Shown here: positions 11,296 to 28,973 of the stretch, piece by piece
Numbering within the stretch: the first letter of the stretch is position 1
Layout of the letters: each line of letters begins with the position of its first letter
DNA from: Macrostomum lignano
Lineage: Eukaryota
NCBI GenBank assembly: GCA_002269645.1
Contig: NIVC01001999.1
Coordinates: 1-64,000, forward strand
Direction of reading: 5' to 3'
DNA: 64,000 nt
Position numbers and translations under genes: made by a program
Notes under the pieces: model-generated
What the model was told of the DNA's origin: nothing
What the model saw: the letters and a program-made list of their open reading frames with translations, nothing else
Databases searched by the model: none

Positions 11296-14200
11296 ATGCT
11301 TCGTCCCGACAGTTAATGCTTCGTCCCGACAGTAAAATTTGGCCATATCCCGACAGTTAATGCTTTTTCCCGACAGTTATATTCGGCCATATCCCGACAG
11401 TCATTGCTTCGTGCCGACAGTTAATGCTTCGTCCTGACAGTTAAATTCGGCCATATCCCGACAGTTAATGCTTCGTCCCGACAGTAAAATTCGGCCATAT
11501 CCCGACAGTTAATGCTTCGTCCCGACAGTAAAATTCGGCCATATCCCGACAGTTAATGCTTTGTCCCGACAGTTATATTCGGCCATATCCCGACAGTTAA
11601 TGCTTCGTCCCGACAGTTAATGCTTGTCCCGACAGTTAATGCTTCGTCCCGACAGTTAATGCTTTGTCCCGACAGTTAATGCTTGATCCCGACAGTTAAA
11701 TTCGGCCATATCCCGACAGTTAATGCTTCGTCCCGACAGTTAAATTCGGCCATATCCCGACAGTTAATGCTTCGTCCCGACAGTTAATGCTTCGTCCCGA
11801 CAGTTAAATTCGGCCATATCCCTACAGTTAATGCTTCGTCCCGACAGTTAATGCTTTGTCCCGACAGTTAATGCTTCGTCCCGACAGTTAATGCTTTGTC
11901 CCGACAGTTAATGCTTGATCCCGACAGTTAAATTCGGCCATATCCCGACAGTTAATGCTTCGTCCCGACAGTTAAATTCGGCCATATCCCGACAGTTAAT
12001 GCTTCGTCCCGACAGTTAATGCTTCGTCCCGACAGTTAAATTCGGCCATATCCCTACAGTTAATGCTTCGTCCCGACAGTTAATGCTTTGTCCCGACAGT
12101 TAATGCTTCGTCCCGACAGTTAATGCTTCGTCCCGACAGTTAATGCTTTGTTCCGACAGTTAATGCTTCATCCCGACAGTTAAATTCGGCCATATCCCGA
12201 CAGTTAATGCTTCGTTCCGACAGTTTATGCTTTGTCCCGACAGTTAATGCTTCGTCCCGACAGTTAAATTCGGCCATATCCCGACAGTTAATGCTTCGTC
12301 CCGACAGTTAATGCTTCGTCCCGACAGTTAATGCTTCGTCCCGACAGTAAAATTCGGCCATATCCCGACAGTTAATGCTTCGTCCCGACAGTTATATTCG
12401 GCCATATCCCGACAGTCATTGCTTCGTCCCGACAGTTAATGCTTCGTCCTGACAGTTAAATTCGGCCATATCCCGACAGTTAATGCTTCGTCCCGACAGT
12501 TAATGCTTCGTCCCGACAGTAAAATTCGGCCATATCCCGACAGTTAATGCTTTGTCCCGACAGTTATATTCGGCCATATCCCGACAGTTAATGATTCGTC
12601 CGACAGTTAATGCTTCGTCCTCCAGAGGCGCTGTCCCTCAGCCCTCTCACCAGCTCCGGAAGCTCCTCTTGCGCCTCTCGCGCAGAGACATCCGGGCTGC
12701 CACCATGACCCTCTCTGGTCACGGCTGCTTCTCCAGGCACCAGTACCTGCAGGGCAACGCCACCAACGCCACCTGTAGTTTCTGCAACTCAGGTGACGAA
12801 ACCGCTGAGCATTTCGTCAGCATCTGTCCCGCCTTCACGCGGGCCAGACTCACTTACCTCGGGCCACACACATCTATTACTGAAGCGTGCAAACCCGAAA
12901 ACTTTAATCAGCTCATGCGCTACCTTCGGGCCACCCGCAGGGCTGAACTCTCCTTTCCAGAGAGCACCATAGCTGCTGGCGACACTGGGGGACCTCCCTG
13001 GGCGGCGCCAACCCTCCGTCCATAGCGACGCGTCGGCCGTTCAGGGACTAGCGGAATGGGCGCCCGCGCCTTCCCGCTGTGTCCCCTCCGGGACAGCCCT
13101 GCAGCTAAGTCAAGTAAGTCAAGTAATGCTTCGTCCCGACAGTTAATGCTTTGTCCCGACAGTTAATGCTTTGTCCCGACAGTTAATGCTTCGTCCGACA
13201 GTTAATGCTTTGTCCCGACAGTTAATGCTTCGTCCCGACAGTTAAATTCGGCCATATCCCGACAGTTAATGCTTCGTCCCGACAGTTAATGCTTTGTCCC
13301 GACAGTTAATGCTTCATCCCGACAGTTAAATTCGGCCATATCCCGACAGTTAATGCTTCGTCCCGACAGTTAATGCTTCGTCCCGACAGTTAATGCTTCG
13401 TCCCGACAGTTAATGCTTCATCCCGGCAGTTAAATTCGGCCATATCCCGACAGTTAATGCTTCGTCCCGACAGTTAATGCTTTGTCCCGACAGTTAATGC
13501 TTTGTCCCGACAGTTAATGCTTCATCCCGGCAGTTAAATTCGGCCATATCCCGACAGTTAATGCTTCGTCCCGACAGTTTATGCTTTGTCCCGACAGTTA
13601 ATGCTTCGTCCCGACAGTTAAATTCGGCCATATCCCGACAGTTAATGCTTCGTCCCGACAGTTTATGCTTTGTCCGACAGTTAATGCTTCATCCCGACAG
13701 TTAAATTCGGCCATATCCCGACAGTTAATGCTTCGTCCCGACAGTTTATGCTTTGTCCCGACAGTTAATGCTTCGTCCCGACAGTTAAATTCGGCCATAT
13801 CCCGACAGTTAATGCTTCGTCCCGACAGTTAATGCTTCGTCCCGACAGTTAAATTCGGCCATATCCCTACAGTTAATGCTTCGTCCCGACAGTTAATGCT
13901 TTGTCCCGACAGTTAATGCTTCGTCCCGACAGTTAAATTCGGCCATATCCCGACAGTTAATGCTTCGTCCCGACAGTTTATGCTTTGTCCCGACAGTTAA
14001 TGCTTCATCCCGACAGTTAAATTCGGCCATATCCCGACAGTTAATGCTTCGTCCCGACAGTTTATGCTTTGTCCCGACAGTTAATGCTTCGTCCCGACAG
14101 TTAAATTCGGCCATATCCCGACAGTTAATGCTTCGTCCCGACAGTTAATGCTTCGTCCCGACAGTAAAATTCGGCCATATCCCGACAGTTAATGCTTCGT

Positions 14201-20100: not shown

Positions 20101-23100
20101 ATTTGCTAGAGCAGCAGCCAGCAAGAAAAGGCAGCGCGCGCACGCCGCGCAGGCGCTGCGCGCCTGTGCGCGCGCCGCGCTTTAGAAAAATTTCAAAAGT
20201 GCGCCGGACGCCGTCCGCGGATTTACAACTTTTTCCTATAGGGCATAACACTGGCCTGTTCACACGCGCTCCTTCGAATAAACTTTTTCTTGACCACATC
20301 ATGGAGCTGAGATCCGCAGCTTTCATTTGAATCAAGTCACAATTGAAATGGACTGAAATTATGTCTGCTAGAAGACATCGTAGCAAGGGTTCCGGAACTT
20401 TTGATGGACAGTATAGCATTAGCTATGGTAATTAAAGGTGTGTGGCAACCCCCCTAGTCCTTGGACTAAATAGCCATATGCATCCTTCAGATGTGCTATA
20501 TAATAGCTGTGGCTAAGCTGTTGGTTGCAAATCTGCCTATTAAGGCATATGTAATCAAATTTTATTATTATTTGGCACATTAGCATGTCTAGGTTCAAAT
20601 GTCTATGGTAAATAAAAGGGCTAGATTTGTTTGGTATTACAGTTCATAGCTCAACTCAACAAAGATCTGTCCTTGGGCAGACTCTTCTGCCATGGCAACT
20701 ACCAGATGAAAATTTCATGCAAGAAATACAACCCAAACCGATCAACTCTGTTTAGATGGCCCGCACCCAGCGAAACAAGGCCACCATGGGTCACCTGGGC
20801 CTGCTGAAGGCTCGCCTGGCCAAGCTGAAACGCGAGCTCATCGAGCCCAAAGGCGGCGGCGGCGGCGGCACCGGCGAAGGCTTCGACGTGGCAAAAACTG
20901 GCGACGCCCGGGTCGGCTTTGTCGGCTTCCCGTCGGTCGGCAAATCGACGCTGTTGAGCAACCTGGCGGGTGTCTACTCCGAGGTGGCCGCCTACGAGTT
21001 TACGACCTTGACGACCGTGCCTGGGGTCATCAAGTACAAGGGCGCCAAGATCCAGCTGCTCGACCTGCCCGGCATCATCGAGGGCGCCAAGGACGGCAAA
21101 GGACGGGGCAAACAGGTCGGTTTTGGGGCCTGGAGAATCAGGGGAACTGTAGCAGCTGGGTGGCTGAAGAATCAGGGGAACTGTAGCAGCTGGGTGGCTG
21201 AAGAATCAGGGGATCTGTAGCAGCTGGGTGGCTGAAGAATCAGGGGAACTGTAGCAGCTGGGTGCCTGAAGAATCAGGGGAACTGTAGCAGCTGGGTGGC
21301 TGAAGAATCAGGGGATCTGTAGCAGCTGGGTGGCTGAAGAATCAGGGGATCTGTAGCAGCTGGGTGCCTGAAGAATCAGGGGAACTGTAGCAGCTGGGTG
21401 GCTGAAGAATCAGGGGATCTGTAGCAGCTGGGTGGCTGAAGAATCAGGGGATCTGTAGCAGCTGGGTGGCTGAAGAATCAGGGGATCTGTAGCAGCTGGG
21501 TGGCTGAAGAATCAGGGGATCTGTAGCAGCTGGGTGCCTGAAGAATCAGGGGAACTGTAGCAGCTGGGTGGCTGAAGAATCAGGGGATCTGTAGCAGCTG
21601 GGTGGCTGAAGAATCAGGGGATCTGTAGCAGCTGGGTGCCTGAAGAATCAGGGGATCTGTAGCAGCTGGGTGCCTGAAGAATCAGGGGATCTGTAGCAGC
21701 TGGGTGGCTGAAGAATCAGGGGATCTGTAGCAGCTGGGTGGCTGAAGAATCAGGGGATCTGTAGCAGCTGGGTGCCTGAAGAATCAGGGGATCTGTAGCA
21801 GCTGGGTGGCTGAAGAATCAGGGGAACTGTAGCAGCTGGGTGGCTGAAGAATCAGGGGATGGATATATTAATAATCAGGTTGAACTCCGCCCTTTGTGTC
21901 GCCCAGGTGATTGCGGTGGCGCGCACCTGCTCATTGATTCTAATCGTGCTGGACGTGCTGAAGCCGCTGCAGCACAAGCGTCTCATTGAGCACGAAGTGG
22001 AGGGCTTTGGCATCCGGCTGAACAAGCAGCCGCCCAACATCGGCTTCAAGCGGAAGGACAAGGGCGGCATCAACTTGCAGTGCCTGGTGCCGCAGTCCGA
22101 GCTCGATGGCGACGTTGTCAAGGGCATTCTGAATGAGTACAAAATTCACAATGCCGATATCACGCTGAGGTGAGGCGTTTTCTGTTTCATTTCTGACTGT
22201 GGTCAGATTTTAGGTGAGATTGTAGATGAGATTTTAGGTGAGATTGTAGATGAGATTTTAGGTGAGATTGTAGATGAGATTTTAGGTGAGATTGTAGATG
22301 AGATTTTAGATGAGATTTTAGGGGAGATTGTAGGTGAGATTGTAGATGAGATTTTAGGTGAGATTGTAGATGAGATTTTAGGGGAGATTGTAGATGAGAT
22401 TTTAGGTGAGATTGTAGGTGAGATTTCAGGTGAAATTTCAGGTGACTTGACTTACTTGACTTAGCTGCAGGGCTGTCCCGGAGGGGACACAGCGGGAAGG
22501 CGCGGGCGCCCATTCCGCTAGTCCCTGAACGGCCGACGCGTCGCTATGGACGGAGGGTTGGCGCCGCCCAGGGAGGTCCCCCAGTGTCGCCAGCAGCTAT
22601 GGTGCTCTCTGGAAAGGAGAGTTCAGCCCTGCGGGTGGCCCGAAGGTAGCGCATGAGCTGATTAAAGTTTTCGGGTTTGCACGCTTCAGTAATAGATGTG
22701 TGTGGCCCGAGGTAAGTGAGTCTGGCCCGCGTGAAGGCGGGACAGATGCTGACGAAATGCTCAGCGGTTTCGTCACCTGAGTTGCAGAAACTACAGGTGG
22801 CGTTGGTGGCGTTGCCCTGCAGGTACTGGTGCCTGGAGAAGCAGCCGTGACCAGAGAGGGTCATGGTGGCAGCCCGGATGTCTCTGCGCGAGAGGCGCAA
22901 GAGGAGCTTCCGGAGCTGGTGAGAGGGCTGAGGGACAGCGCCTCTGGATTGCCTGCAGTTCGTGCGGTTCGCCCAAGTCGAGCGGTGCTGAGTCCTGATC
23001 CACGCTTTGATGCGTGAGTCGATGACACAGCCAGGAATCGGGACAAGAGGTTCGGGGCCGAGAGAGGAGCCGGAGGCACCAACTTTTGCAAGGGTGTCAG

Positions 23101-26100
23101 CCAACTCATTTCCTCGGATCCCCACATGCCCCGGAACCCACTTAAGGGTAATTTTGTTGGCGGAACCCAACACATTGAGGAGTTTGATACAGTCAAGGAC
23201 TGTAGCAGAGTTGGTGCTGCAGCCACTGATGGCGTGCAAGGCAGCTTGGCTGTCCGAATGGAAAATGATGTTCTTACCAGTAACGCCAGTGGCGAGAAGC
23301 TCTGCAGTGCAGGAGCTGATGGCCAGAACTTCATTTTGGAAAACACTGGAGTTGACCCCAGTGTATTGAGCGTGGGTAGCGATGACCCTCCCGTTCAGAA
23401 AGATTCCAACACCAAAGCCGGTGTTGGCTGACTGCTTAGAACCGTCGGTGTAGCAATGAAGCTCACCAGGGTTCCAATGGTCATTGATGTTATCGCGCGA
23501 GTCGATAGCTACGGAGTAGCGCTGTCTCAGGTTGAGCGTTGAGGCAATGCCATCGGTGAAGACGCGATTGGCCTGACACTCGTTGAGAAAGTTGAGGCAC
23601 AGATCGCTATGCGGGACAAGGTTCCGCTTAGCAGGTGCTCTCATGTAAATGAATTTGACGCCGGCATCAATTAGACGCCGCGTCGTTCTAGCCGCCTCAC
23701 CCCTGATGAAGAGGTCAAGAGGCGGAAGATTAAGGAAGGCCCCCATGCCAGCAAAGGGCGTGGACCTGGTGGCGTTGCAGATGAGCCTACACGCTCTGCC
23801 TTGGATCGTGTTGAGCAGGTCTGCATGGCTTTTGACCTGGGTAGCGCTAACCCAGACAACAGAGGCGTACGTAATGGCAGGTCTAACTACGGAAGTATAG
23901 ATCCACCAAAGCCGCTTTGGGGATAGACCCCAAGAAGTGCCAAGTGCTCGTCGGAGCTGGGCCAGGATGGCTGAGGCACGCTTGGCTTTTGCTTTCACGT
24001 GGAAGGACCAGTTGAGCCGGTGGTCAAGTGTGACCCCGAGACATCTGGTCTGGTGCGCGAAGGCAATATCTCTGCCGTAGAGCTGCAGAGGACGTATGTT
24101 CCAGCGTAGTCTGCTGGTAAACATAATGGCAACGGTTTTGGGCTCAGAGAGTTCCAGACCATTGTCATTGGCCCAGGATTCTGCTTTGCGGATAAAGCTC
24201 TGCATCAGATCCCTGAGCGTGCTGGGAGACGGTCCTGCCACAATGGCCGTGACGTCATCAGCATACCCGACTTTGAAGACGGGGTCGGGTCGGGAGTCAC
24301 TCAAAAGAGCGTCCATGACCAGGTTCCAGAGCGTCGGGGTGAGGACTCCGCCTTGGGGTCCACCCTTACAGACTCTGGTGGAGGCAGTTTGCCCAAGAAG
24401 TTGGGCAGTGACCGTACGGTTGGAGATCATGTACATGATCCACCGTATGAGGGTAGCATGAGCTTTGCGATTTTGAAGGGCCCTCTGAAACGCTTCAAAG
24501 ATAACGTTGTCGAAGGCGCCAACAATGTCAAGAAAGAGAGCCAGAGCGTAACCGTCACCCAGTACCGCCCTTTCAATCTTCTCGACAATCGCATGCAGGG
24601 CGCTGTCAGTCGACCTCCCGGTGCGGAAGGCGTGCTGATTATTGCTGAGGGGCATCGCTGTCAGCTCGCAGGACAGCAGCCGCCAGAGAATAAGCCTCTC
24701 AGTGAGCTTAAGCATTGCTGACGTTAAGCTAATAGGCCGGAAGGCCTTGACGCTTTGGTAGTCACCCTTCCCAGGTTTGGGAATAAAGACTACCCGAGCT
24801 TCAGTCCAGCATTTGGGAACGTATCCCAGCTGGATAGAGGCCCGCATGAGATTGCGGGTGAGTCTCAGGAACGAGGGTATCTTGGCTGCTTCACGAAGGA
24901 GAACAGGGTAGATACCATCAGGTCCAGGAGATTTGAAGGGTTTGAAGGTTCTGACCGCACGAGCGATTAGGTCTTCAGTGACAATGCCCGCCGCTAGGGT
25001 GGCTCCATCCATCGAATGGTTGGGCTCCGGTCTAGCAGTAGGTACCCTCGGGAAGAATGTGCTAAGCATATGCTGAAGCACTTCTTCAGGGTCTTTAGTA
25101 AGAGAGCCATCATCTTTTTTGATCATGGCTAATTTGGACATTTTGTCCATTGTAAGGGCCTTGACAAGCCTAGAAGTAGGTCTGTCTTGATCCAATTCAT
25201 TGCAGAATTGGCGCCACTTACATTCCTTGGCCTTGCGCACTTCAGATTTGAAATTGCGGGAGGCTTGCCGGAAAAGCTCCATGTCCTCCGGGTTTCCGGT
25301 CTTCATGGCACGGCGATGAAGGCTTTTGGCCTTCCGCCTGAGTTTCCCCAGCTCCGGGTTCCACCACGGCGCCGAGGTCTTGCCTTTGTAGGCGCGAGCA
25401 GGACAAGCCGCTTCGTAGGCTTCAATAATGCAACCTGTCAGCGTCTCAGCCATATGATCCACATCCTCGCAGGTCTCAATCGGACGTAAGTCCGTGAGTT
25501 CCTGCAGGTGCAGATCAAGGGCAGCCTTGTAGGCCGCCCAATCAGTGTTGCGGATATTGCGTCTCCAAGTGATCGGAGACTGGGTTTTAGTGTCCGCGAT
25601 GTTAAAGGCGATAAAGCAGTGGTCAGACAGGGAGGGCTCCTCAGACCAGACTCTCCACTCCTCAACTCTGTCAAAGAGTCTTGGGGTAACGAGTGTGGCG
25701 TCGAGGACCTCGGTCCATCTGCCATTATTAAAGGTAGGAGTGCTGCCGCGGTTGCAGAGCATGAGGTTTGTGTTAGAGATGAGGGCCAGAAGCTCCTCTC
25801 CTCTAGTGTTGGTATCTTTGCTGCCCCAGTGCTTGTGGTGCGCGTTGAGGTCGCCCCCTAAGCACAGCTCAGCGTTCTGGGACTCGCAGTACTGCGCGAG
25901 GCGCAGTAAACTCTCAGGAGCAGGGTCTCTGTCGCCTGGGATATAAACCGAGGCAACAAGACACGTACGCGGAGAGAAATGATTAGATTGGATGACACAA
26001 AGGTCTCCATCAGAGAGATCAGTCCTCAGCCAAGCCTGGAGATGGCTAGCAGCGAGGATAGCCGCTCTAGGGCGGCTGTTCCCCGGGCCACACACATAAA

Positions 26101-28973
26101 AATCAGAGTAGCCAGAGGGAATGTTGGGCAACTTACCGTTGCGCATCCAGGGTTCCTGGATCAGGATGAGGCCTGGCCTGTACAGCTCAGCAATCTTCAT
26201 CAGATTTACTGACGCAGATACGCAATGCTGTAAATGAATTTGCAGACAGAATGTCGCTCCTTTGGCAGCGTGGAGCTTAGTCATACTGTATTAAATGCAA
26301 TTTCTGGCTAGAGCCCAGGGCCATCAAGGAGACTTGGACAACAGATCGTCCTCGTCCCAGGCCGCTGGGGCTTGACTGGGAGATGGGAGTTGGTCGACGT
26401 CCATGGCCTCCTCACCCCCACCGGCCCCCCAGCAGAGTCCTCAGGCTCCGATGACAGGATGGAGGAAGCTTCCTCACCTGCATCTTTACCTTCAGACCCC
26501 ACCAAGGTGGCCGAGGAGAGCTCGGATTCCGAAGACCCGGCCTCGTCCTCAACTCCTTCTCCGACTGGCAGGTTTGGTTCCCGGGGCTTGGCCGGAGCCG
26601 TTACCGCGGTCGCCGAACTGCTGCTAGCAGAGGGGCGAGATGCAGCTTTGGCTTTGGGATCGGCTTGCGCCTTTCCTTGGGCCTTAGACTGCGCCCCGCT
26701 CTTGCCGGAGATGCCGGGGTTGGCAGTAAGCCTTCCCTTTGGCAGACTTTCCTCGGCGCATCTTGAGCTTGAGGGCACCCAGCTGGAAAGAGGATCCATT
26801 AGGGTACCGACTCGCCCAAGTGCTGGAAAGGCCGAGGACAATTGAGTTGCCCGTCTCCCCCCTGCGGACTTTACGGTGATACACCAGTCCACTAGCAGGG
26901 AGGTCGGGGTTCAGACGCAGTAGGACCCGGCGAATAACGTCTGGTCCAGCTGCGGTGCTCTTAGCAGGGACGAAAACCACATAGGGTATCGTCTTTGGAC
27001 GCTGGCCCTCGCGAAGAAAAAGAGCTCCGCCAAGGTCAGCATCCAAGGAGACCGTCGGTAGCCGCTGGAGCAGCTGCCGAGCGTCCTCCTCACTGCTGGA
27101 GCAATAAGAACGAATGTGCTTCGCAGCACCATCCGCTCAATGCCGATGGAGATTCCCTCCTCGACAGTCAGCTCAATCAGATAGGAGTCAACAGCACTCC
27201 ACACTTTTTGAAGCTGATCAGTGGTCCAGTCCTGGTCGCGACCTTGGATGATCACTCCCGGGATTTTGGCCTTGGCCTTCGCCGCAAAGGTAGCTCCCGA
27301 AGGAACCTCCTTGTTGGCAGTGGCCATTTGTTGCGCCGTGGTTTCGGCCTCAGCAGCCGCGGCAGCAGCTCCAGGGAGCGCCGCCGCTGAACTACTGGAG
27401 CTTCCACCGGCCGGCCCGCCTGGTTGCCTTGGGACTCCAGTCGCTTCAGCATCCATGGTGGACGCCGCCGCTTTGGCCCCCGCAGCTCCCTTCTTGGCCT
27501 GCCTTTTGGCGCGTTGTTTAGCGCGTTTGCGCTCAAGCCGAGCCCGCTGAGCTTCATCGGATCTGCCAGATTTGGCCGGTCCTTTAGGCTCAGAGCTCGC
27601 GGTTCCCTTAGATCCACCAGCGGAGCTGGCAGGTCTTTGGGTATTTTGAGTTTGGTAGCTCTGGTCGGATCTGCCAGCAGAGCCAGCCGGTCCTTCCTTT
27701 GCCACAGTTGAATCAGTCGGTTGGGATCTGCCAGGAGGGCCGGCCGGTCCTTCGGACTGAGGTTGGGGTTTAGAAGGGTCCCCGTCCCTAGAGTTAGCTT
27801 GATTATCCATAGACGGCTCGAAGGCCATGATAAAAGGTTGGTGGGCTACCCTCAAAGGGGCGCGGTACCCACCCGGCCGCTCCACCTGACCGGGCAGTAG
27901 GCCAATAGCACCCTCAAGGCTGGCCCGACACCAGGAGGGGGACCGCTTGCGACCGGACTACTCCCCGGCCTTCCAGCCCATCGGCACGGTCAACACCTTA
28001 GGCATTAGAGAGTACGTTGAGCAGTACCACGGCCTGCAGGTTGGCGAGCCAGACCCGCATACCCAAATTCGGCCGAAGCCACTGGATAGGGTCGCCAGCG
28101 CCGGAGCCCAGTCTGTCCAGCAGCCCTAGGGACTGCCTTGAACACACGCGGGGACGAGTACCCTGGGTCGACTTGCGAGACAGCGTGGGGGGGGGGGGTC
28201 TGCGGCTGCCAGAGGCAAATAGAGGGTGCAGACCTCCCACCAGCCTTGACCTGCTGAAGATAGGGGCAGGCGTGAAGCATCGCAGACCTTAGCCCATGGG
28301 CCTAGTCTGTCTCATACTTCACTGGCATGCTGAATACGCCTTCGCGTGCAAATTTCAGGTGAGATTGTAGGTGAGATTACAAGTAAGATTGTAGATGAGA
28401 TTCCAGGTTAGATTGTAGATGAGATTCCAGTTGAGATTGCATGTTAGATTTCAGGTGAGGACTCTGGGACAGAAGGAATTTCGGTGAGACTTGAGATTAA
28501 CGAGTTCCCCTTCGCCTCCCGTCCCCGCTAGATACGACGCCACAGCAGAGGATCTGATTGACGTGATCGAGGGCAACCGAGTGTACATCCCGGCCATCTA
28601 CGTGCTGAACAAGATCGACCAGATCACCATCGAGGAGCTGGACGTGATCTACAAGATTCCCCACTGCGTGCCGATCTCGGCGCATCACAAGTGGAACTTT
28701 GACGACCTGCTGGAGCTGATCTGGGACTACCTGCACCTGGTGCGCATCTACACCAAGCCCAAGGGCCAGCTGCCTGACTACGAGGCGCCCATCGTGCTGA
28801 AGACCGGACGGCAGACTGTTGAGGACTTCTGCAACAAGCTGCACCGCAGCATCATCAGGGAGTTCAAGTACGCCCTGGTGTGGGGCTCCTCCGTCAAGCA
28901 CACGCCGCAGAAGGTCGGCAAAGATCACGAACTGGCCGATGAGGATGTGGTTCAGATCATCAAGAAGGTTTAG
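17122..28973 (+). CDS. DRG1: Developmentally regulated GTP-binding protein 1 (OBG family, TGS domain)
   Basis: Exons 17122-17160, 20756-21115, 21907-22169 and 28532-28973, all GT-AG, total 1104 nt = 367 aa. Motifs [30 protein letters not shown]. Confidence 0.95.
17495..19380 (+). mobile_element. tRNA-derived SINE copy A, split by a DNA transposon (17495-17666 + 19227-19380)
   Basis: Both halves align with the intact copy at 59656. B-box-like ggctcgattcc. Confidence 0.7.
17667..19226. mobile_element. TIR DNA transposon derivative with 4-bp TSD (ACAT)
   Basis: Ends ggcccattccatataa / ttatatggaatggccc. TSD acat at 17663-17666 and 19227-19230. Removing it restores the SINE sequence gtgtacatgc. 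Confidence 0.75.
19714..20030. mobile_element. Possible old hAT-like MITE
   Basis: TIR tagagatgtcccgaaa / tttcggaacatctcta. The flanking 8-mers match at only 5 of 8 positions. Confidence 0.35.
21140..21860 (+). repeat. 34-bp intronic minisatellite (DRG1 intron 2)
   Basis: gaagaatcaggggatctgtagcagctgggtggct, about 21 copies. Confidence 0.95.
22544..26284 (-). CDS. Retrotransposon ORF2: AP endonuclease, reverse transcriptase, RNase H, C-terminal Cys/His finger
   Basis: Uninterrupted 1246 aa: [17 protein letters not shown]; QGGVLTP, YADD; YTDGSK, SDSQAAL, WVPGH..GNELAD; CSFC..ETAEHF..C. Confidence 0.95.
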   Translation of the reverse strand: MTKLHAAKGATFCLQIHLQHCVSASVNLMKIAELYRPGLILIQEPWMRNGKLPNIPSGYSDFYVCGPGNSRPRAAILAASHLQAWLRTDLSDGDLCVIQSNHFSPRTCLVASVYIPGDRDPAPESLLRLAQYCESQNAELCLGGDLNAHHKHWGSKDTNTRGEELLALISNTNLMLCNRGSTPTFNNGRWTEVLDATLVTPRLFDRVEEWRVWSEEPSLSDHCFIAFNIADTKTQSPITWRRNIRNTDWAAYKAALDLHLQELTDLRPIETCEDVDHMAETLTGCIIEAYEAACPARAYKGKTSAPWWNPELGKLRRKAKSLHRRAMKTGNPEDMELFRQASRNFKSEVRKAKECKWRQFCNELDQDRPTSRLVKALTMDKMSKLAMIKKDDGSLTKDPEEVLQHMLSTFFPRVPTARPEPNHSMDGATLAAGIVTEDLIARAVRTFKPFKSPGPDGIYPVLLREAAKIPSFLRLTRNLMRASIQLGYVPKCWTEARVVFIPKPGKGDYQSVKAFRPISLTSAMLKLTERLILWRLLSCELTAMPLSNNQHAFRTGRSTDSALHAIVEKIERAVLGDGYALALFLDIVGAFDNVIFEAFQRALQNRKAHATLIRWIMYMISNRTVTAQLLGQTASTRVCKGGPQGGVLTPTLWNLVMDALLSDSRPDPVFKVGYADDVTAIVAGPSPSTLRDLMQSFIRKAESWANDNGLELSEPKTVAIMFTSRLRWNIRPLQLYGRDIAFAHQTRCLGVTLDHRLNWSFHVKAKAKRASAILAQLRRALGTSWGLSPKRLWWIYTSVVRPAITYASVVWVSATQVKSHADLLNTIQGRACRLICNATRSTPFAGMGAFLNLPPLDLFIRGEAARTTRRLIDAGVKFIYMRAPAKRNLVPHSDLCLNFLNECQANRVFTDGIASTLNLRQRYSVAIDSRDNINDHWNPGELHCYTDGSKQSANTGFGVGIFLNGRVIATHAQYTGVNSSVFQNEVLAISSCTAELLATGVTGKNIIFHSDSQAALHAISGCSTNSATVLDCIKLLNVLGSANKITLKWVPGHVGIRGNELADTLAKVGASGSSLGPEPLVPIPGCVIDSRIKAWIRTQHRSTWANRTNCRQSRGAVPQPSHQLRKLLLRLSRRDIRAATMTLSGHGCFSRHQYLQGNATNATCSFCNSGDETAEHFVSICPAFTRARLTYLGPHTSITEACKPENFNQLMRYLRATRRAELSFPESTIAAGDTGGPPWAAPTLRP
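26308..27885 (-). CDS. Retrotransposon ORF1, broken by at least two frameshifts (~27100 and ~26730)
   Basis: Three overlapping frames in the ORF track join into one protein (…TFAAKAK…LIAP / …PYVVFVP…LKLK / low-complexity tail). The stop lies 23 nt before the ORF2 ATG. Confidence 0.65.
28104..28349 (-). ncRNA. HDV-like self-cleaving ribozyme at the retrotransposon 5' end
   Basis: P1 GCACGCG/CGCGUGU with G.U at +1; P2 GACCCA/UGGG(C)UC; P3 GGG/CCC; L3 UACUCGU; P1.1 AC/GU; P4 GCAGUCC/GGGCUGC; J4/2 CAGAC. Folded by hand. Confidence 0.8.

What the first reader, a model, noticed from the sequence alone, without database searches (positions are those of the whole stretch)
28104..28349. HDV-like ribozyme defines the retrotransposon 5' end, with a covarying P1.1
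Seen (minus strand): the element's first 7 nt GCACGCG (28349-28343) pair with CGCGUGU (28150-28144), giving the G.U wobble at +1. The order P2 GACCCA, P3 GGG, L3 UACUCGU, P3' CCC, P1', J1/4 GU, P4 hairpin (28141-28116), J4/2 CAGAC (putative catalytic C at 28115), P2' UGGG(C)UC matches the nested double pseudoknot. The usual P1.1 CC/GG is replaced by AC/GU, a compensatory change. J1/2 is ~170 nt and holds its own hairpin (28322-28272). The predicted cut site coincides with the TSD boundary. Established: HDV-like ribozymes process R2 and some APE-type elements. Inference: this element is released from read-through host transcripts by self-cleavage; novelty for this lineage is unchecked.
Basis: partly seen in the sequence, partly recalled or inferred. 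Interest (0 to 1): 0.85.

Follow-up and report, generated by a model that had tools for sequence, protein, structure and literature searches.

The report
HDV-like ribozyme heading a flatworm LINE
The first 246 bases of a young LINE retrotransposon, probably in the flatworm Macrostomum lignano, can fold into the double-pseudoknot shape of an HDV-like self-cleaving ribozyme; one related element keeps the fold through compensating base changes, so it is probably a real but ordinary new example of a known way for such elements to cut their own RNA 5' end.

Summary
P1 starts on the first base after a 12-nt target-site duplication. [quoted passage not shown] A second, 5'-truncated copy in the window matches it 100% over 504 nt.

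One sequence alone is modest evidence: a loose descriptor with P1 fixed at nt 1 matches 1% of shuffles, a strict one 0.01%. The decisive evidence is one relative, L001 (ORF2 57% identical). Its contig begins at the homologous base and has the same layout. Of 18 core pairs, 8 are unchanged, 8 changed on both sides and still pair (2 in P1, 2 in P1.1, 4 in P2), 1 changed on one side, and 1 is lost.

The 173-nt J1/2 is a conserved, closed three-hairpin domain. No Rfam model matches. Seven relatives at 31-36% ORF2 identity show no such core. Catalysis is untested. This copy has a broken ORF1 and lies antisense in an intron of a DRG-type GTPase gene, so host read-through cannot feed it.

Verdict: a probable HDV-like ribozyme and a new member of a known kind. 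I found no published report from flatworms.

The parts
22445..28349 (-). Full-length LINE (5905 nt): 5' UTR 28349-27832, ORF1, ORF2, 3' UTR, simple-repeat tail
   Evidence: Bounded by the TSDs. The 3' end is confirmed by a second copy that is 100% identical up to 22445.
28350..28361 (-). Upstream target-site duplication CACCTGAAATTT
   Evidence: The ATTT variant of the 12-nt satellite unit occurs only in these two units.
22433..22444 (-). Downstream target-site duplication CACCTGAAATTT
28343..28349 (-). P1 5' strand GCACGCG. The predicted cleavage is 5' of G28349.
   Evidence: P1 is in the MFE fold. Two of its pairs covary with L001.
28170..28342 (-). J1/2 peripheral domain (173 nt): closing stem plus three hairpins. 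Hairpin A is 28322-28272.
   Evidence: Independent folds of the window and L001 give the same architecture. RNAalifold reports 7 both-sided changes.
28164..28169 (-). P2 5' strand GACCCA
   Evidence: Four of its six pairs covary with L001.
28151..28163 (-). P3 GGG / L3 UACUCGU / P3' CCC. L3 nucleotides 28159-28158 form the 5' strand of P1.1.
   Evidence: P3 is invariant. The L3 positions U...CGU are conserved in L001.
28144..28150 (-). P1 3' strand CGCGUGU
28142..28143 (-). J1/4 GU, the 3' strand of P1.1
   Evidence: Both pairs covary with L001: C-G/A-U becomes U-A/C-G.
28116..28141 (-). P4 hairpin
   Evidence: Folds at -11.6 kcal/mol. L001 has a different sequence that forms a longer hairpin in the same place.
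28111..28115 (-). J4/2 CAGAC. C28115 is the candidate catalytic cytosine, at the first position of J4/2.
   Evidence: L001 has C at the same place (CUGC). The rule that the catalytic C is first in J4/2 is from PMC10879173.
28104..28110 (-). P2 3' strand UGGG(C)UC, with a bulged C
26308..27831 (-). ORF1. ATG at 27831. Frameshift near 27094-27088 and an in-frame stop at 26913-26911, so it is broken in this copy.
22544..26284 (-). ORF2, 1246 aa, intact: AP endonuclease, reverse transcriptase, RNase H, C-terminal Cys/His motif
22445..22463 (-). 3' tail TAAGTCAAGTAAGTCAAGT
   Evidence: The identical tail is on the second copy.
12621..13124 (+). Second copy of the same family, 5'-truncated, with its own 12-nt TSD AATGCTTCGTCC (12609-12620 and 13125-13136)
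   Evidence: 504 of 504 nt identical.

Best explanation
The first 246 nt of this LINE's sense RNA fold into an HDV-like self-cleaving ribozyme, a nested double pseudoknot.

Shown here: the fold is present. P1 begins at the exact first base of the insertion. The fold is kept by compensatory changes in one related element.

Inferred: when the element is transcribed as part of a longer RNA that starts upstream, P1 (nt 1-7) pairs with the strand just after P3/L3. The structured 173-nt J1/2 domain holds P1 and P2 together. C28115 at the start of J4/2 and a bound Mg2+ then catalyse cleavage 5' of G28349. That leaves the element RNA with a 5'-OH at its own first base. No upstream sequence is needed and the whole ribozyme stays on the product, so target-primed reverse transcription copies it to each new full-length insertion.

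This particular copy is a defective, antisense-in-intron insertion. It carries the ribozyme as inherited cargo and is not a source element.
For: - The pairings and their order are present.
- P1 starts at the TSD boundary.
- The strict descriptor is unique in 128 kb of real sequence (both strands of the 64-kb window) and matches 2 of 20000 shuffles.
- L001 (ORF2 57% identical) starts at the homologous base. It is the only strict hit in its own contig and matches 1 of 20000 shuffles.
- Core pairs, window against L001: 8 the same, 8 changed on both sides and still paired, 1 changed on one side, 1 lost. Randomising the changed bases keeps as many pairs in 92 of 200000 trials. Independent mutation at the same rate does so in 0 of 200000. 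Sliding the partners by 1-3 nt leaves 4-8 of 17 pairs.
- P1 and P4 appear in the MFE folds of both sequences.
- J1/2 is a closed domain in both. This matches the 'pinch' domains that activate large HDV-like ribozymes (PMC4908430).
- The L3 U and G positions and the J4/2 C are conserved in both.
- The family is young: its two copies are identical over 504 nt.
Against: - There is no biochemical evidence.
- Only two sequences carry the comparison.
- No Rfam HDV-like model matches, even at E<=10 on the core alone. This is expected with a 173-nt insert and pseudoknots, but it is still a negative result.
- P1.1 has no pair of G-C pairs.
- L001 has G-C rather than G.U at +1, a 6-bp P1, and no A in J4/2 (CUGC). 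R2 ribozymes keep a constrained A there (PMC3774820).
- In L001 the J4/2 C could pair with G197.
- Seven relatives at 31-36% ORF2 identity show no such core.
- This copy is antisense to its host gene.
Confidence: 0.75

Rival explanations
1. The 5' end is set by an internal RNA polymerase II promoter that initiates at +1, as in many LINEs. The conserved 5' UTR, especially hairpin A at +28 to +78, is promoter DNA, a protein-binding element or an IRES-like element. The ribozyme-like fold is then inactive, or only a back-up. This is partly compatible with the main explanation: L1Tc has a dual promoter and ribozyme.
For: - Hairpin A is conserved in sequence (41 nt at 88% identity), more than pairing alone requires.
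- This copy has no sense-strand host transcript.
- L1Tc combines a promoter and a ribozyme in the same 77 nt (PMC3383444, listed).
- L001 deviates from the consensus in J4/2 and at the +1 wobble.
Against: A promoter or linear binding site does not explain 8 both-sided compensatory changes spread over P1, P1.1 and P2 in a pseudoknotted topology. It also does not explain why P1 starts exactly at nt 1 in both elements.
Confidence: 0.17
2. A conserved long-range RNA structure with another function, such as packaging, ORF1p or ORF2p binding, or translation, that happens to share the HDV-like topology without catalysis.
For: - In R2 the protein binds a pseudoknot within the ribozyme region, and the fold is proposed to act as an IRES (PMC6765202).
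- L003, a 35% relative, also pairs its extreme 5' end with a site about 90 nt downstream, yet lacks a canonical core.
Against: The full set of family features is present together: P3 of 3 bp, a 7-nt L3 with the conserved U and G, a 2-bp P1.1, C first in J4/2, and P1 at nt 1. The set is unique in 128 kb.
Confidence: 0.06
3. A chance match found by a reader who was free to choose a long J1/2.
For: The loose descriptor hits 1% of shuffles at a fixed start and about one site per kb in real sequence.
Against: - The strict descriptor matches 1e-4 of shuffles.
- The same fold occurs at the homologous place in L001, with compensatory changes.
Confidence: 0.02

Closest known systems
[quoted passage not shown]
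   Same: The host element has the same domain set: AP endonuclease, RT, RNase H and a C-terminal nucleic-acid-binding motif. It inserts dispersedly with roughly 12-bp TSDs. The ribozyme occupies the extreme 5' end and cleaves at nt 1.
   Different: L1TcRz is compact (77 nt) and doubles as the Pr77 promoter. Here the ribozyme spans 246 nt, with a 173-nt structured J1/2. The host is a flatworm. No sequence homology was shown. Clade membership of the element was not tested.
R2 element ribozymes (PMC3774820)
   Same: HDV-like fold at the 5' end. P1 is 6-7 bp and P2 at least 5 bp. P4 is variable. J1/2 ranges from 23 to over 700 nt. P1 shows compensatory change between species. The function is to release the element from a co-transcript.
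   Different: R2 has a restriction-like endonuclease and a single ORF, and it inserts only in 28S rDNA, where RNA polymerase I supplies the co-transcript. The present element is APE-type, has two ORFs and is dispersed. R2 P1.1, P3 and L3 are highly conserved, and P1.1 is usually G-C.
Large HDV-like ribozymes with a J1/2 peripheral domain (PMC4908430)
   Same: A closed, stable domain inserted between P1 and P2. That paper shows such domains 'pinch' P1 and P2 together and accelerate cleavage by up to about 1000-fold.
   Different: Whether this J1/2 domain is needed for activity here is untested. Its hairpin A is conserved in sequence beyond what structure needs.
HDV-like ribozymes of baggins and RTE elements (Ruminski et al. 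2011, as summarised in PMC6765202)
   Same: APE-type LINEs that lack their own promoter, are transcribed from introns or upstream elements, and are released by a 5' HDV-like ribozyme.
   Different: Different hosts (insects and others) and different clades. The original paper was not available to me, so details were not compared.
Twister-variant ribozymes at the 5' end of Perere-3 LINEs in Schistosoma mansoni (PMC8501958)
   Same: A flatworm APE-type LINE with a 5' self-cleaving ribozyme next to the TSD. The logic of 5' processing is the same.
   Different: A different ribozyme class (twister). Part of that ribozyme's P1 is regenerated from the target site, whereas an HDV-like ribozyme needs nothing upstream.

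Membership tests
HDV-like self-cleaving ribozymes | Nested double pseudoknot in the order P1, J1/2, P2, P3, L3, P3', P1', J1/4, P4, J4/2, P2'. P1 crosses P2, and P1.1 crosses P3. | tested here: met
   The same order and spacing occur in L001.
HDV-like self-cleaving ribozymes | The cleavage site is the first nucleotide of P1, and no upstream sequence is needed. | tested here: met
   Position only. P1 nt 1 is the first base after the TSD, and it is the first base of the L001 contig. Cleavage itself was not observed.
HDV-like self-cleaving ribozymes | P1 of 6-7 bp and P2 of at least 5 bp (R2 survey, PMC3774820). | tested here: met
   Window: P1 7 bp, P2 6 bp with one bulge. L001: P1 6 bp, P2 6 bp.
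HDV-like self-cleaving ribozymes | A 3-bp P3 closing an L3 of about 7 nt that keeps the functionally important G. The first U of L3 partners it. That U.G pairing is from my own knowledge of the crystal structures. | tested here: met
   GGG / UACUCGU / CCC in the window and GGG / UCUCCGU / CCC in L001. The importance of the L3 G is from PMC3774820.
HDV-like self-cleaving ribozymes | A two-base-pair P1.1 between L3 positions 2-3 and J1/4. | tested here: met
   A-U + C-G in the window and C-G + U-A in L001; both pairs are compensatory. This is not the usual pair of G-C pairs.
HDV-like self-cleaving ribozymes | Catalytic cytosine at the first position of J4/2 (PMC10879173). | tested here: met
   C28115 follows P4 directly. 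L001 has C228 in the same place. Its catalytic role is untested, and in L001 it could pair with G197.
HDV-like self-cleaving ribozymes | G.U wobble at the cleavage-site end of P1. | tested here: inconclusive
   G28349.U28144 in the window, but G1-C194 in L001.
HDV-like self-cleaving ribozymes | Conserved A in J4/2. This is a 'constrained A' in R2 (PMC3774820); the A-minor contact with P3 is from my own knowledge. | tested here: inconclusive
   The window has CAGAC, with two A residues. L001 has CUGC, with none.
HDV-like self-cleaving ribozymes | Match to a curated covariance model (the HDV-like ribozyme families in Rfam). | tested here: not met
   No hit at the gathering threshold, nor at E<=10, on 501 nt or on the 86-nt core, nor in L001. 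The models cannot encode the pseudoknots or a 173-nt J1/2, so this result is weak.
HDV-like self-cleaving ribozymes | Mg2+-dependent self-scission that gives 2',3'-cyclic phosphate and 5'-OH ends and is abolished by changing the catalytic C to U. | not testable with these tools
   Needs in vitro transcription and cleavage assays.
APE-type non-LTR retrotransposon (LINE) with RNase H | ORF2 with AP endonuclease, reverse transcriptase and RNase H; TSDs; 5'-truncated copies; a simple-repeat 3' tail. | tested here: met
   Pfam hits. 12-nt TSDs on both copies. A truncated identical copy. The tail (TAAGTCAAG)2T.
L1Tc/ingi clade | Phylogenetic placement of the RT within the ingi clade, and the Pr77 hallmark at the 5' end. 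| not tested
   No reference LINE sequences were available, so only the domain order and TSD length are shared. Named relatives in the protein search are from insects and from M. lignano.

The most novel reading that the evidence does not exclude
The conserved three-hairpin J1/2 domain is more than a passive 'pinch'. Hairpin A is kept in sequence as well as in structure. On this reading the domain is a binding site for the element's own proteins, or an internal promoter or IRES module, that gates ribozyme folding. Release of the 5' end would then be coupled to ribonucleoprotein assembly or translation. This would be a regulated HDV-like ribozyme in a flatworm LINE lineage that acquired it independently of its relatives at 31-36% ORF2 identity.
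Probability: 0.12. Interest if true: 0.6.

Novelty: new member of a known kind. Interest (0 to 1): 0.42.

Why it matters
HDV-like ribozymes at LINE 5' ends are established in R2, RTE, baggins and L1Tc/ingi elements, so the principle is not new.

What is new:
- The host. The element is in a free-living flatworm. No paper in the searchable library pairs 'HDV-like' with Macrostomum. The only two papers listed that hold both 'HDV-like' and 'flatworm' are a twister-ribozyme survey and an arthropod RNA-virus survey, judging by their titles. The flatworm LINE ribozyme described so far is a twister variant (PMC8501958).
- A natural pair of ribozymes in which both P1.1 pairs, four P2 pairs and two P1 pairs have been swapped. 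This is a ready-made mutate-and-rescue series.
- A young, probably still active family in a genetically tractable laboratory animal. There, 5' processing, the role of a large J1/2 domain, and the balance between promoter and co-transcription could be tested in vivo.

Tried and rejected
- **Rfam.** Nothing HDV-like at the gathering threshold on the whole window, in E-value mode on 501 nt and on the 86-nt core, or on L001, L003 and L004.
- **ORF1 protein search** to find more 5' ends: no hits. ORF1 is only about 35-41% identical even to L001.
- **Profile search with five ORF2 sequences:** no new close relatives that come with contigs.
- **Exact look-up of the window ORF2:** not on record.
- **L002** (44% relative): its contig starts inside ORF1, so it has no 5' UTR.
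- **Scan of JGI metagenome contigs** for the conserved hairpin-A motif: 8 hits, all about 20-nt chance matches with no ORF2 nearby.
- **IMG/VR scan** with the ORF2 profile: nothing.
- **Seven relatives at 31-36% ORF2 identity** (L003, L004, L013-L017): no strict core upstream of ORF1. An nhmmer profile of the 5' UTR, run against L002, L003, L004, L013 and L014, found no homology.
- **Alternative P2'.** UGGGUAUG at 28065-28058, preceded by a very canonical-looking CGAAUU, was rejected because L001 has no matching partner there.
- **My first, looser descriptor** produced many spurious hits and was tightened.
- **Ruminski et al. 2011** could not be read.
- **No third sequence was found,** so RNAalifold-type or R-scape-type statistics on the core were replaced by my own pair counts and controls.
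Full report
**Observation.**
- P1 GCACGCG (28349-28343) pairs with CGCGUGU (28150-28144): 7 bp, with G.U at +1.
- P2 GACCCA (28169-28164) pairs with UGGG(C)UC (28110-28104).
- P3 GGG pairs with CCC around L3 UACUCGU (28163-28151).
- The two J1/4 bases G28143 and U28142 can pair with C28158 and A28159 of L3. This is P1.1.
- P4 is a hairpin at 28141-28116.
- J4/2 is CAGAC, with C28115 directly after P4.
- J1/2 is 173 nt.

**The element.** It is a 5905-nt LINE at 28349 to 22445 on the minus strand.
- ORF2 (26284-22544, 1246 aa, intact) has AP-endonuclease, reverse-transcriptase and RNase H domains and a C-terminal Cys/His motif.
- ORF1 starts at 27831. It is broken by a frameshift near 27090 and an in-frame stop at 26913-26911.
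- The 3' end is (TAAGTCAAG)2T.
- The insertion sits in a 12-nt satellite. It is flanked by CACCTGAAATTT on both sides, a variant unit found nowhere else in the array. The 5' boundary is therefore fixed to the base, and it coincides with P1 nt 1.
- A second, 5'-truncated copy at 12621-13124 (+) is 504 of 504 nt identical. It has its own 12-nt duplication and the same tail. The family was therefore active very recently, and the 3' boundary is confirmed.
- Partial protein hits of 96-99% identity name Macrostomum lignano.

**Is it more than chance?** I wrote an HDV-like descriptor. It requires:
- P1 of 6-7 bp and P2 of 6-8 bp with at most one bulge;
- P3 of 3 bp and L3 of 7-8 nt;
- a 2-bp P1.1 and a stable P4;
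- C as the first base of J4/2;
- J1/2 of up to 400 nt.

With P1 fixed at nt 1, it fits 202 of 20000 dinucleotide shuffles of the 518-nt 5' UTR. In the real window it gives 121 start sites on the two strands. Adding the published core features (L3 with U first and C-G-pyrimidine at positions 5-7, and a GC-rich P3) leaves 2 of 20000 shuffles. In the real window it then finds a single core, this one, whose only 7-bp P1 partner starts at 28349.

**Comparative evidence.** Of all ORF2 relatives found, only one close relative came with a 5' UTR. This is L001, a 6.5-kb Logan contig whose ORF2 is 57% identical.
- Its first base aligns with 28349.
- The same descriptor hits it once, at nt 1. It is the only strict hit in the contig on either strand, and it matches 1 of 20000 shuffles.
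- Layout in L001: P1 GCCUGC (1-6) with GCAGGC (189-194); J1/2 of 163 nt; P2 CUCAGA (170-175) with UCUGAG (232-237); P3 GGG/CCC; L3 UCUCCGU; P1.1 C180-G196 and U181-A195; P4 197-227; J4/2 CUGC.

Comparing the 18 core pairs of the window with L001 gives this count:

| Class | Pairs |
|---|---|
| Identical | 8 |
| Changed on both sides and still paired | 8 (2 in P1, 2 in P1.1, 4 in P2) |
| Changed on one side and still paired | 1 (G.U to G-C at +1) |
| Lost | 1 (the seventh P1 pair) |

Controls, all:
- Keeping the changed sites but randomising the new bases preserves as many pairs in 92 of 200000 trials.
- Mutating stem bases independently at the observed 50% rate preserves them in 0 of 200000 trials.
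- Sliding the 3' partners by 1-3 nt leaves 4-8 of 17 pairs in L001.

P4 differs in sequence but is a hairpin in both. P1 and P4 are in the pseudoknot-free MFE folds of both RNAs. The pairings are therefore under selection, and they have the crossing topology that defines this ribozyme family (PMC4908430).

**J1/2.** Folded separately, the two J1/2 segments give the same architecture: a closing stem and three hairpins. RNAalifold reports 7 both-sided changes. Large HDV-like ribozymes are known to be activated by such closed domains, which pinch P1 and P2 together (PMC4908430). R2 ribozymes have J1/2 loops of 23 to over 700 nt (PMC3774820). A long J1/2 is therefore normal for the family. Hairpin A is also conserved in sequence (41 nt at 88% identity), which hints at a second role.

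**Negative and limiting results.**
- No Rfam model matches.
- Seven relatives at 31-36% ORF2 identity have no strict core and no detectable 5' UTR homology. As far as I could sample, the ribozyme belongs to the window/L001 lineage only.
- L001 departs from the consensus in three ways: G-C at +1, a 6-bp P1 whose 3' strand is duplicated in two overlapping registers (GCAGGCAGGC), and a J4/2 without A.
- Only two sequences carry the covariation.
- Catalysis is untested.

**Context of this copy.** Pfam hits on + strand ORFs show exons of a DRG-type GTPase gene: MMR_HSR1 at about 20756-21220, its extension domain split between about 21859-22173 and 28491-28973, then TGS. The LINE lies in the intron between the last two, in antisense. 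Host pre-mRNA therefore cannot supply the sense ribozyme RNA, and with its ORF1 frameshift this copy is a dead insertion. That does not bear on function in source copies. An internal promoter is not excluded; L1Tc has both a promoter and a ribozyme (PMC3383444).

**Mechanism.**
- Shown: fold, position and conservation.
- Inferred from the family: co-transcriptional folding, then cleavage 5' of G28349 that depends on C28115 and Mg2+ and gives a 5'-OH. The ribozyme stays on the element RNA, so every full-length insertion starts at G1 and carries it along. It may also help translation of the uncapped RNA, as proposed for R2 and L1Tc (PMC6765202).

**Comparison and novelty.** The closest known case is L1TcRz of the L1Tc/ingi LINEs. 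It shares the protein domain set, the roughly 12-bp duplications and a ribozyme at nt 1, but it is compact and comes from trypanosomatids. In architecture it resembles the large R2 and insect ribozymes with structured J1/2. In flatworms the described LINE ribozyme is a twister variant (PMC8501958). No paper in the library pairs 'HDV-like' with Macrostomum. The only two papers listed that hold both 'HDV-like' and 'flatworm' are a twister-ribozyme survey and an arthropod RNA-virus survey, judging by their titles. I rate this a new member of a known kind. It is a solid annotation, useful to ribozyme and transposon specialists, and not surprising in principle.

Noticed in passing
window 12609-13136 (+): A 5'-truncated copy of the same LINE (12621-13124), 100% identical over 504 nt to the 3' end of the full copy. 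It has its own 12-nt TSD AATGCTTCGTCC and is inserted in a 20-nt minisatellite. Both insertions of this family in the window lie inside tandem-repeat arrays, which may reflect a target preference.
   Followed up: partly
window 20756-21220, 21859-22173, 28491-28973 (+): Exons of a DRG-type GTPase gene (MMR_HSR1, MMR_HSR1_Xtn, TGS). The full LINE and the 12-nt satellite fill the intron between the last two exons, with the LINE in antisense.
   Followed up: partly
window 27094-27088 and 26913-26911 (-): ORF1 of the full copy is broken by a frameshift (homology to L001 ORF1 switches frame) and by an in-frame stop. ORF2 is intact.
   Followed up: yes
window 21130-21860: A 34-nt tandem repeat, 21.5 copies at 97% identity, between two exons of the GTPase gene and overlapping the end of the first ORF.
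   Followed up: no
window 28071-28058 (-): A second possible P2 partner, UGGGUAUG, preceded by CGAAUU. It looks like a textbook J4/2-P2' junction but has no counterpart in L001. It could be an alternative or competing pairing.
   Followed up: partly
L001 189-198: The P1 3' strand is present in two overlapping registers (GCAGGCAGGC). The MFE fold uses the second, non-canonical register, which could compete with the ribozyme fold.
   Followed up: no
L003 114-217: In a 35% relative, the first bases after a poly-T flank (CCGGGCUGC) pair with GCAGCCUGG about 90 nt downstream, followed by a long hairpin (z = -4.3). A P2-like pairing overlaps the ORF1 AUG. No canonical P3/L3 sits next to P1', so this is either a different 5' structure or a diverged ribozyme.
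   Followed up: partly
window 28322-28272 (-) and L001 27-77: Hairpin A of J1/2 contains a run, GGCCCA-N-GGGCUAAGGUCU, that is conserved in sequence between elements whose ORF1 proteins are barely alignable. This suggests a role beyond structure, such as a protein-binding site or a promoter element.
   Followed up: partly
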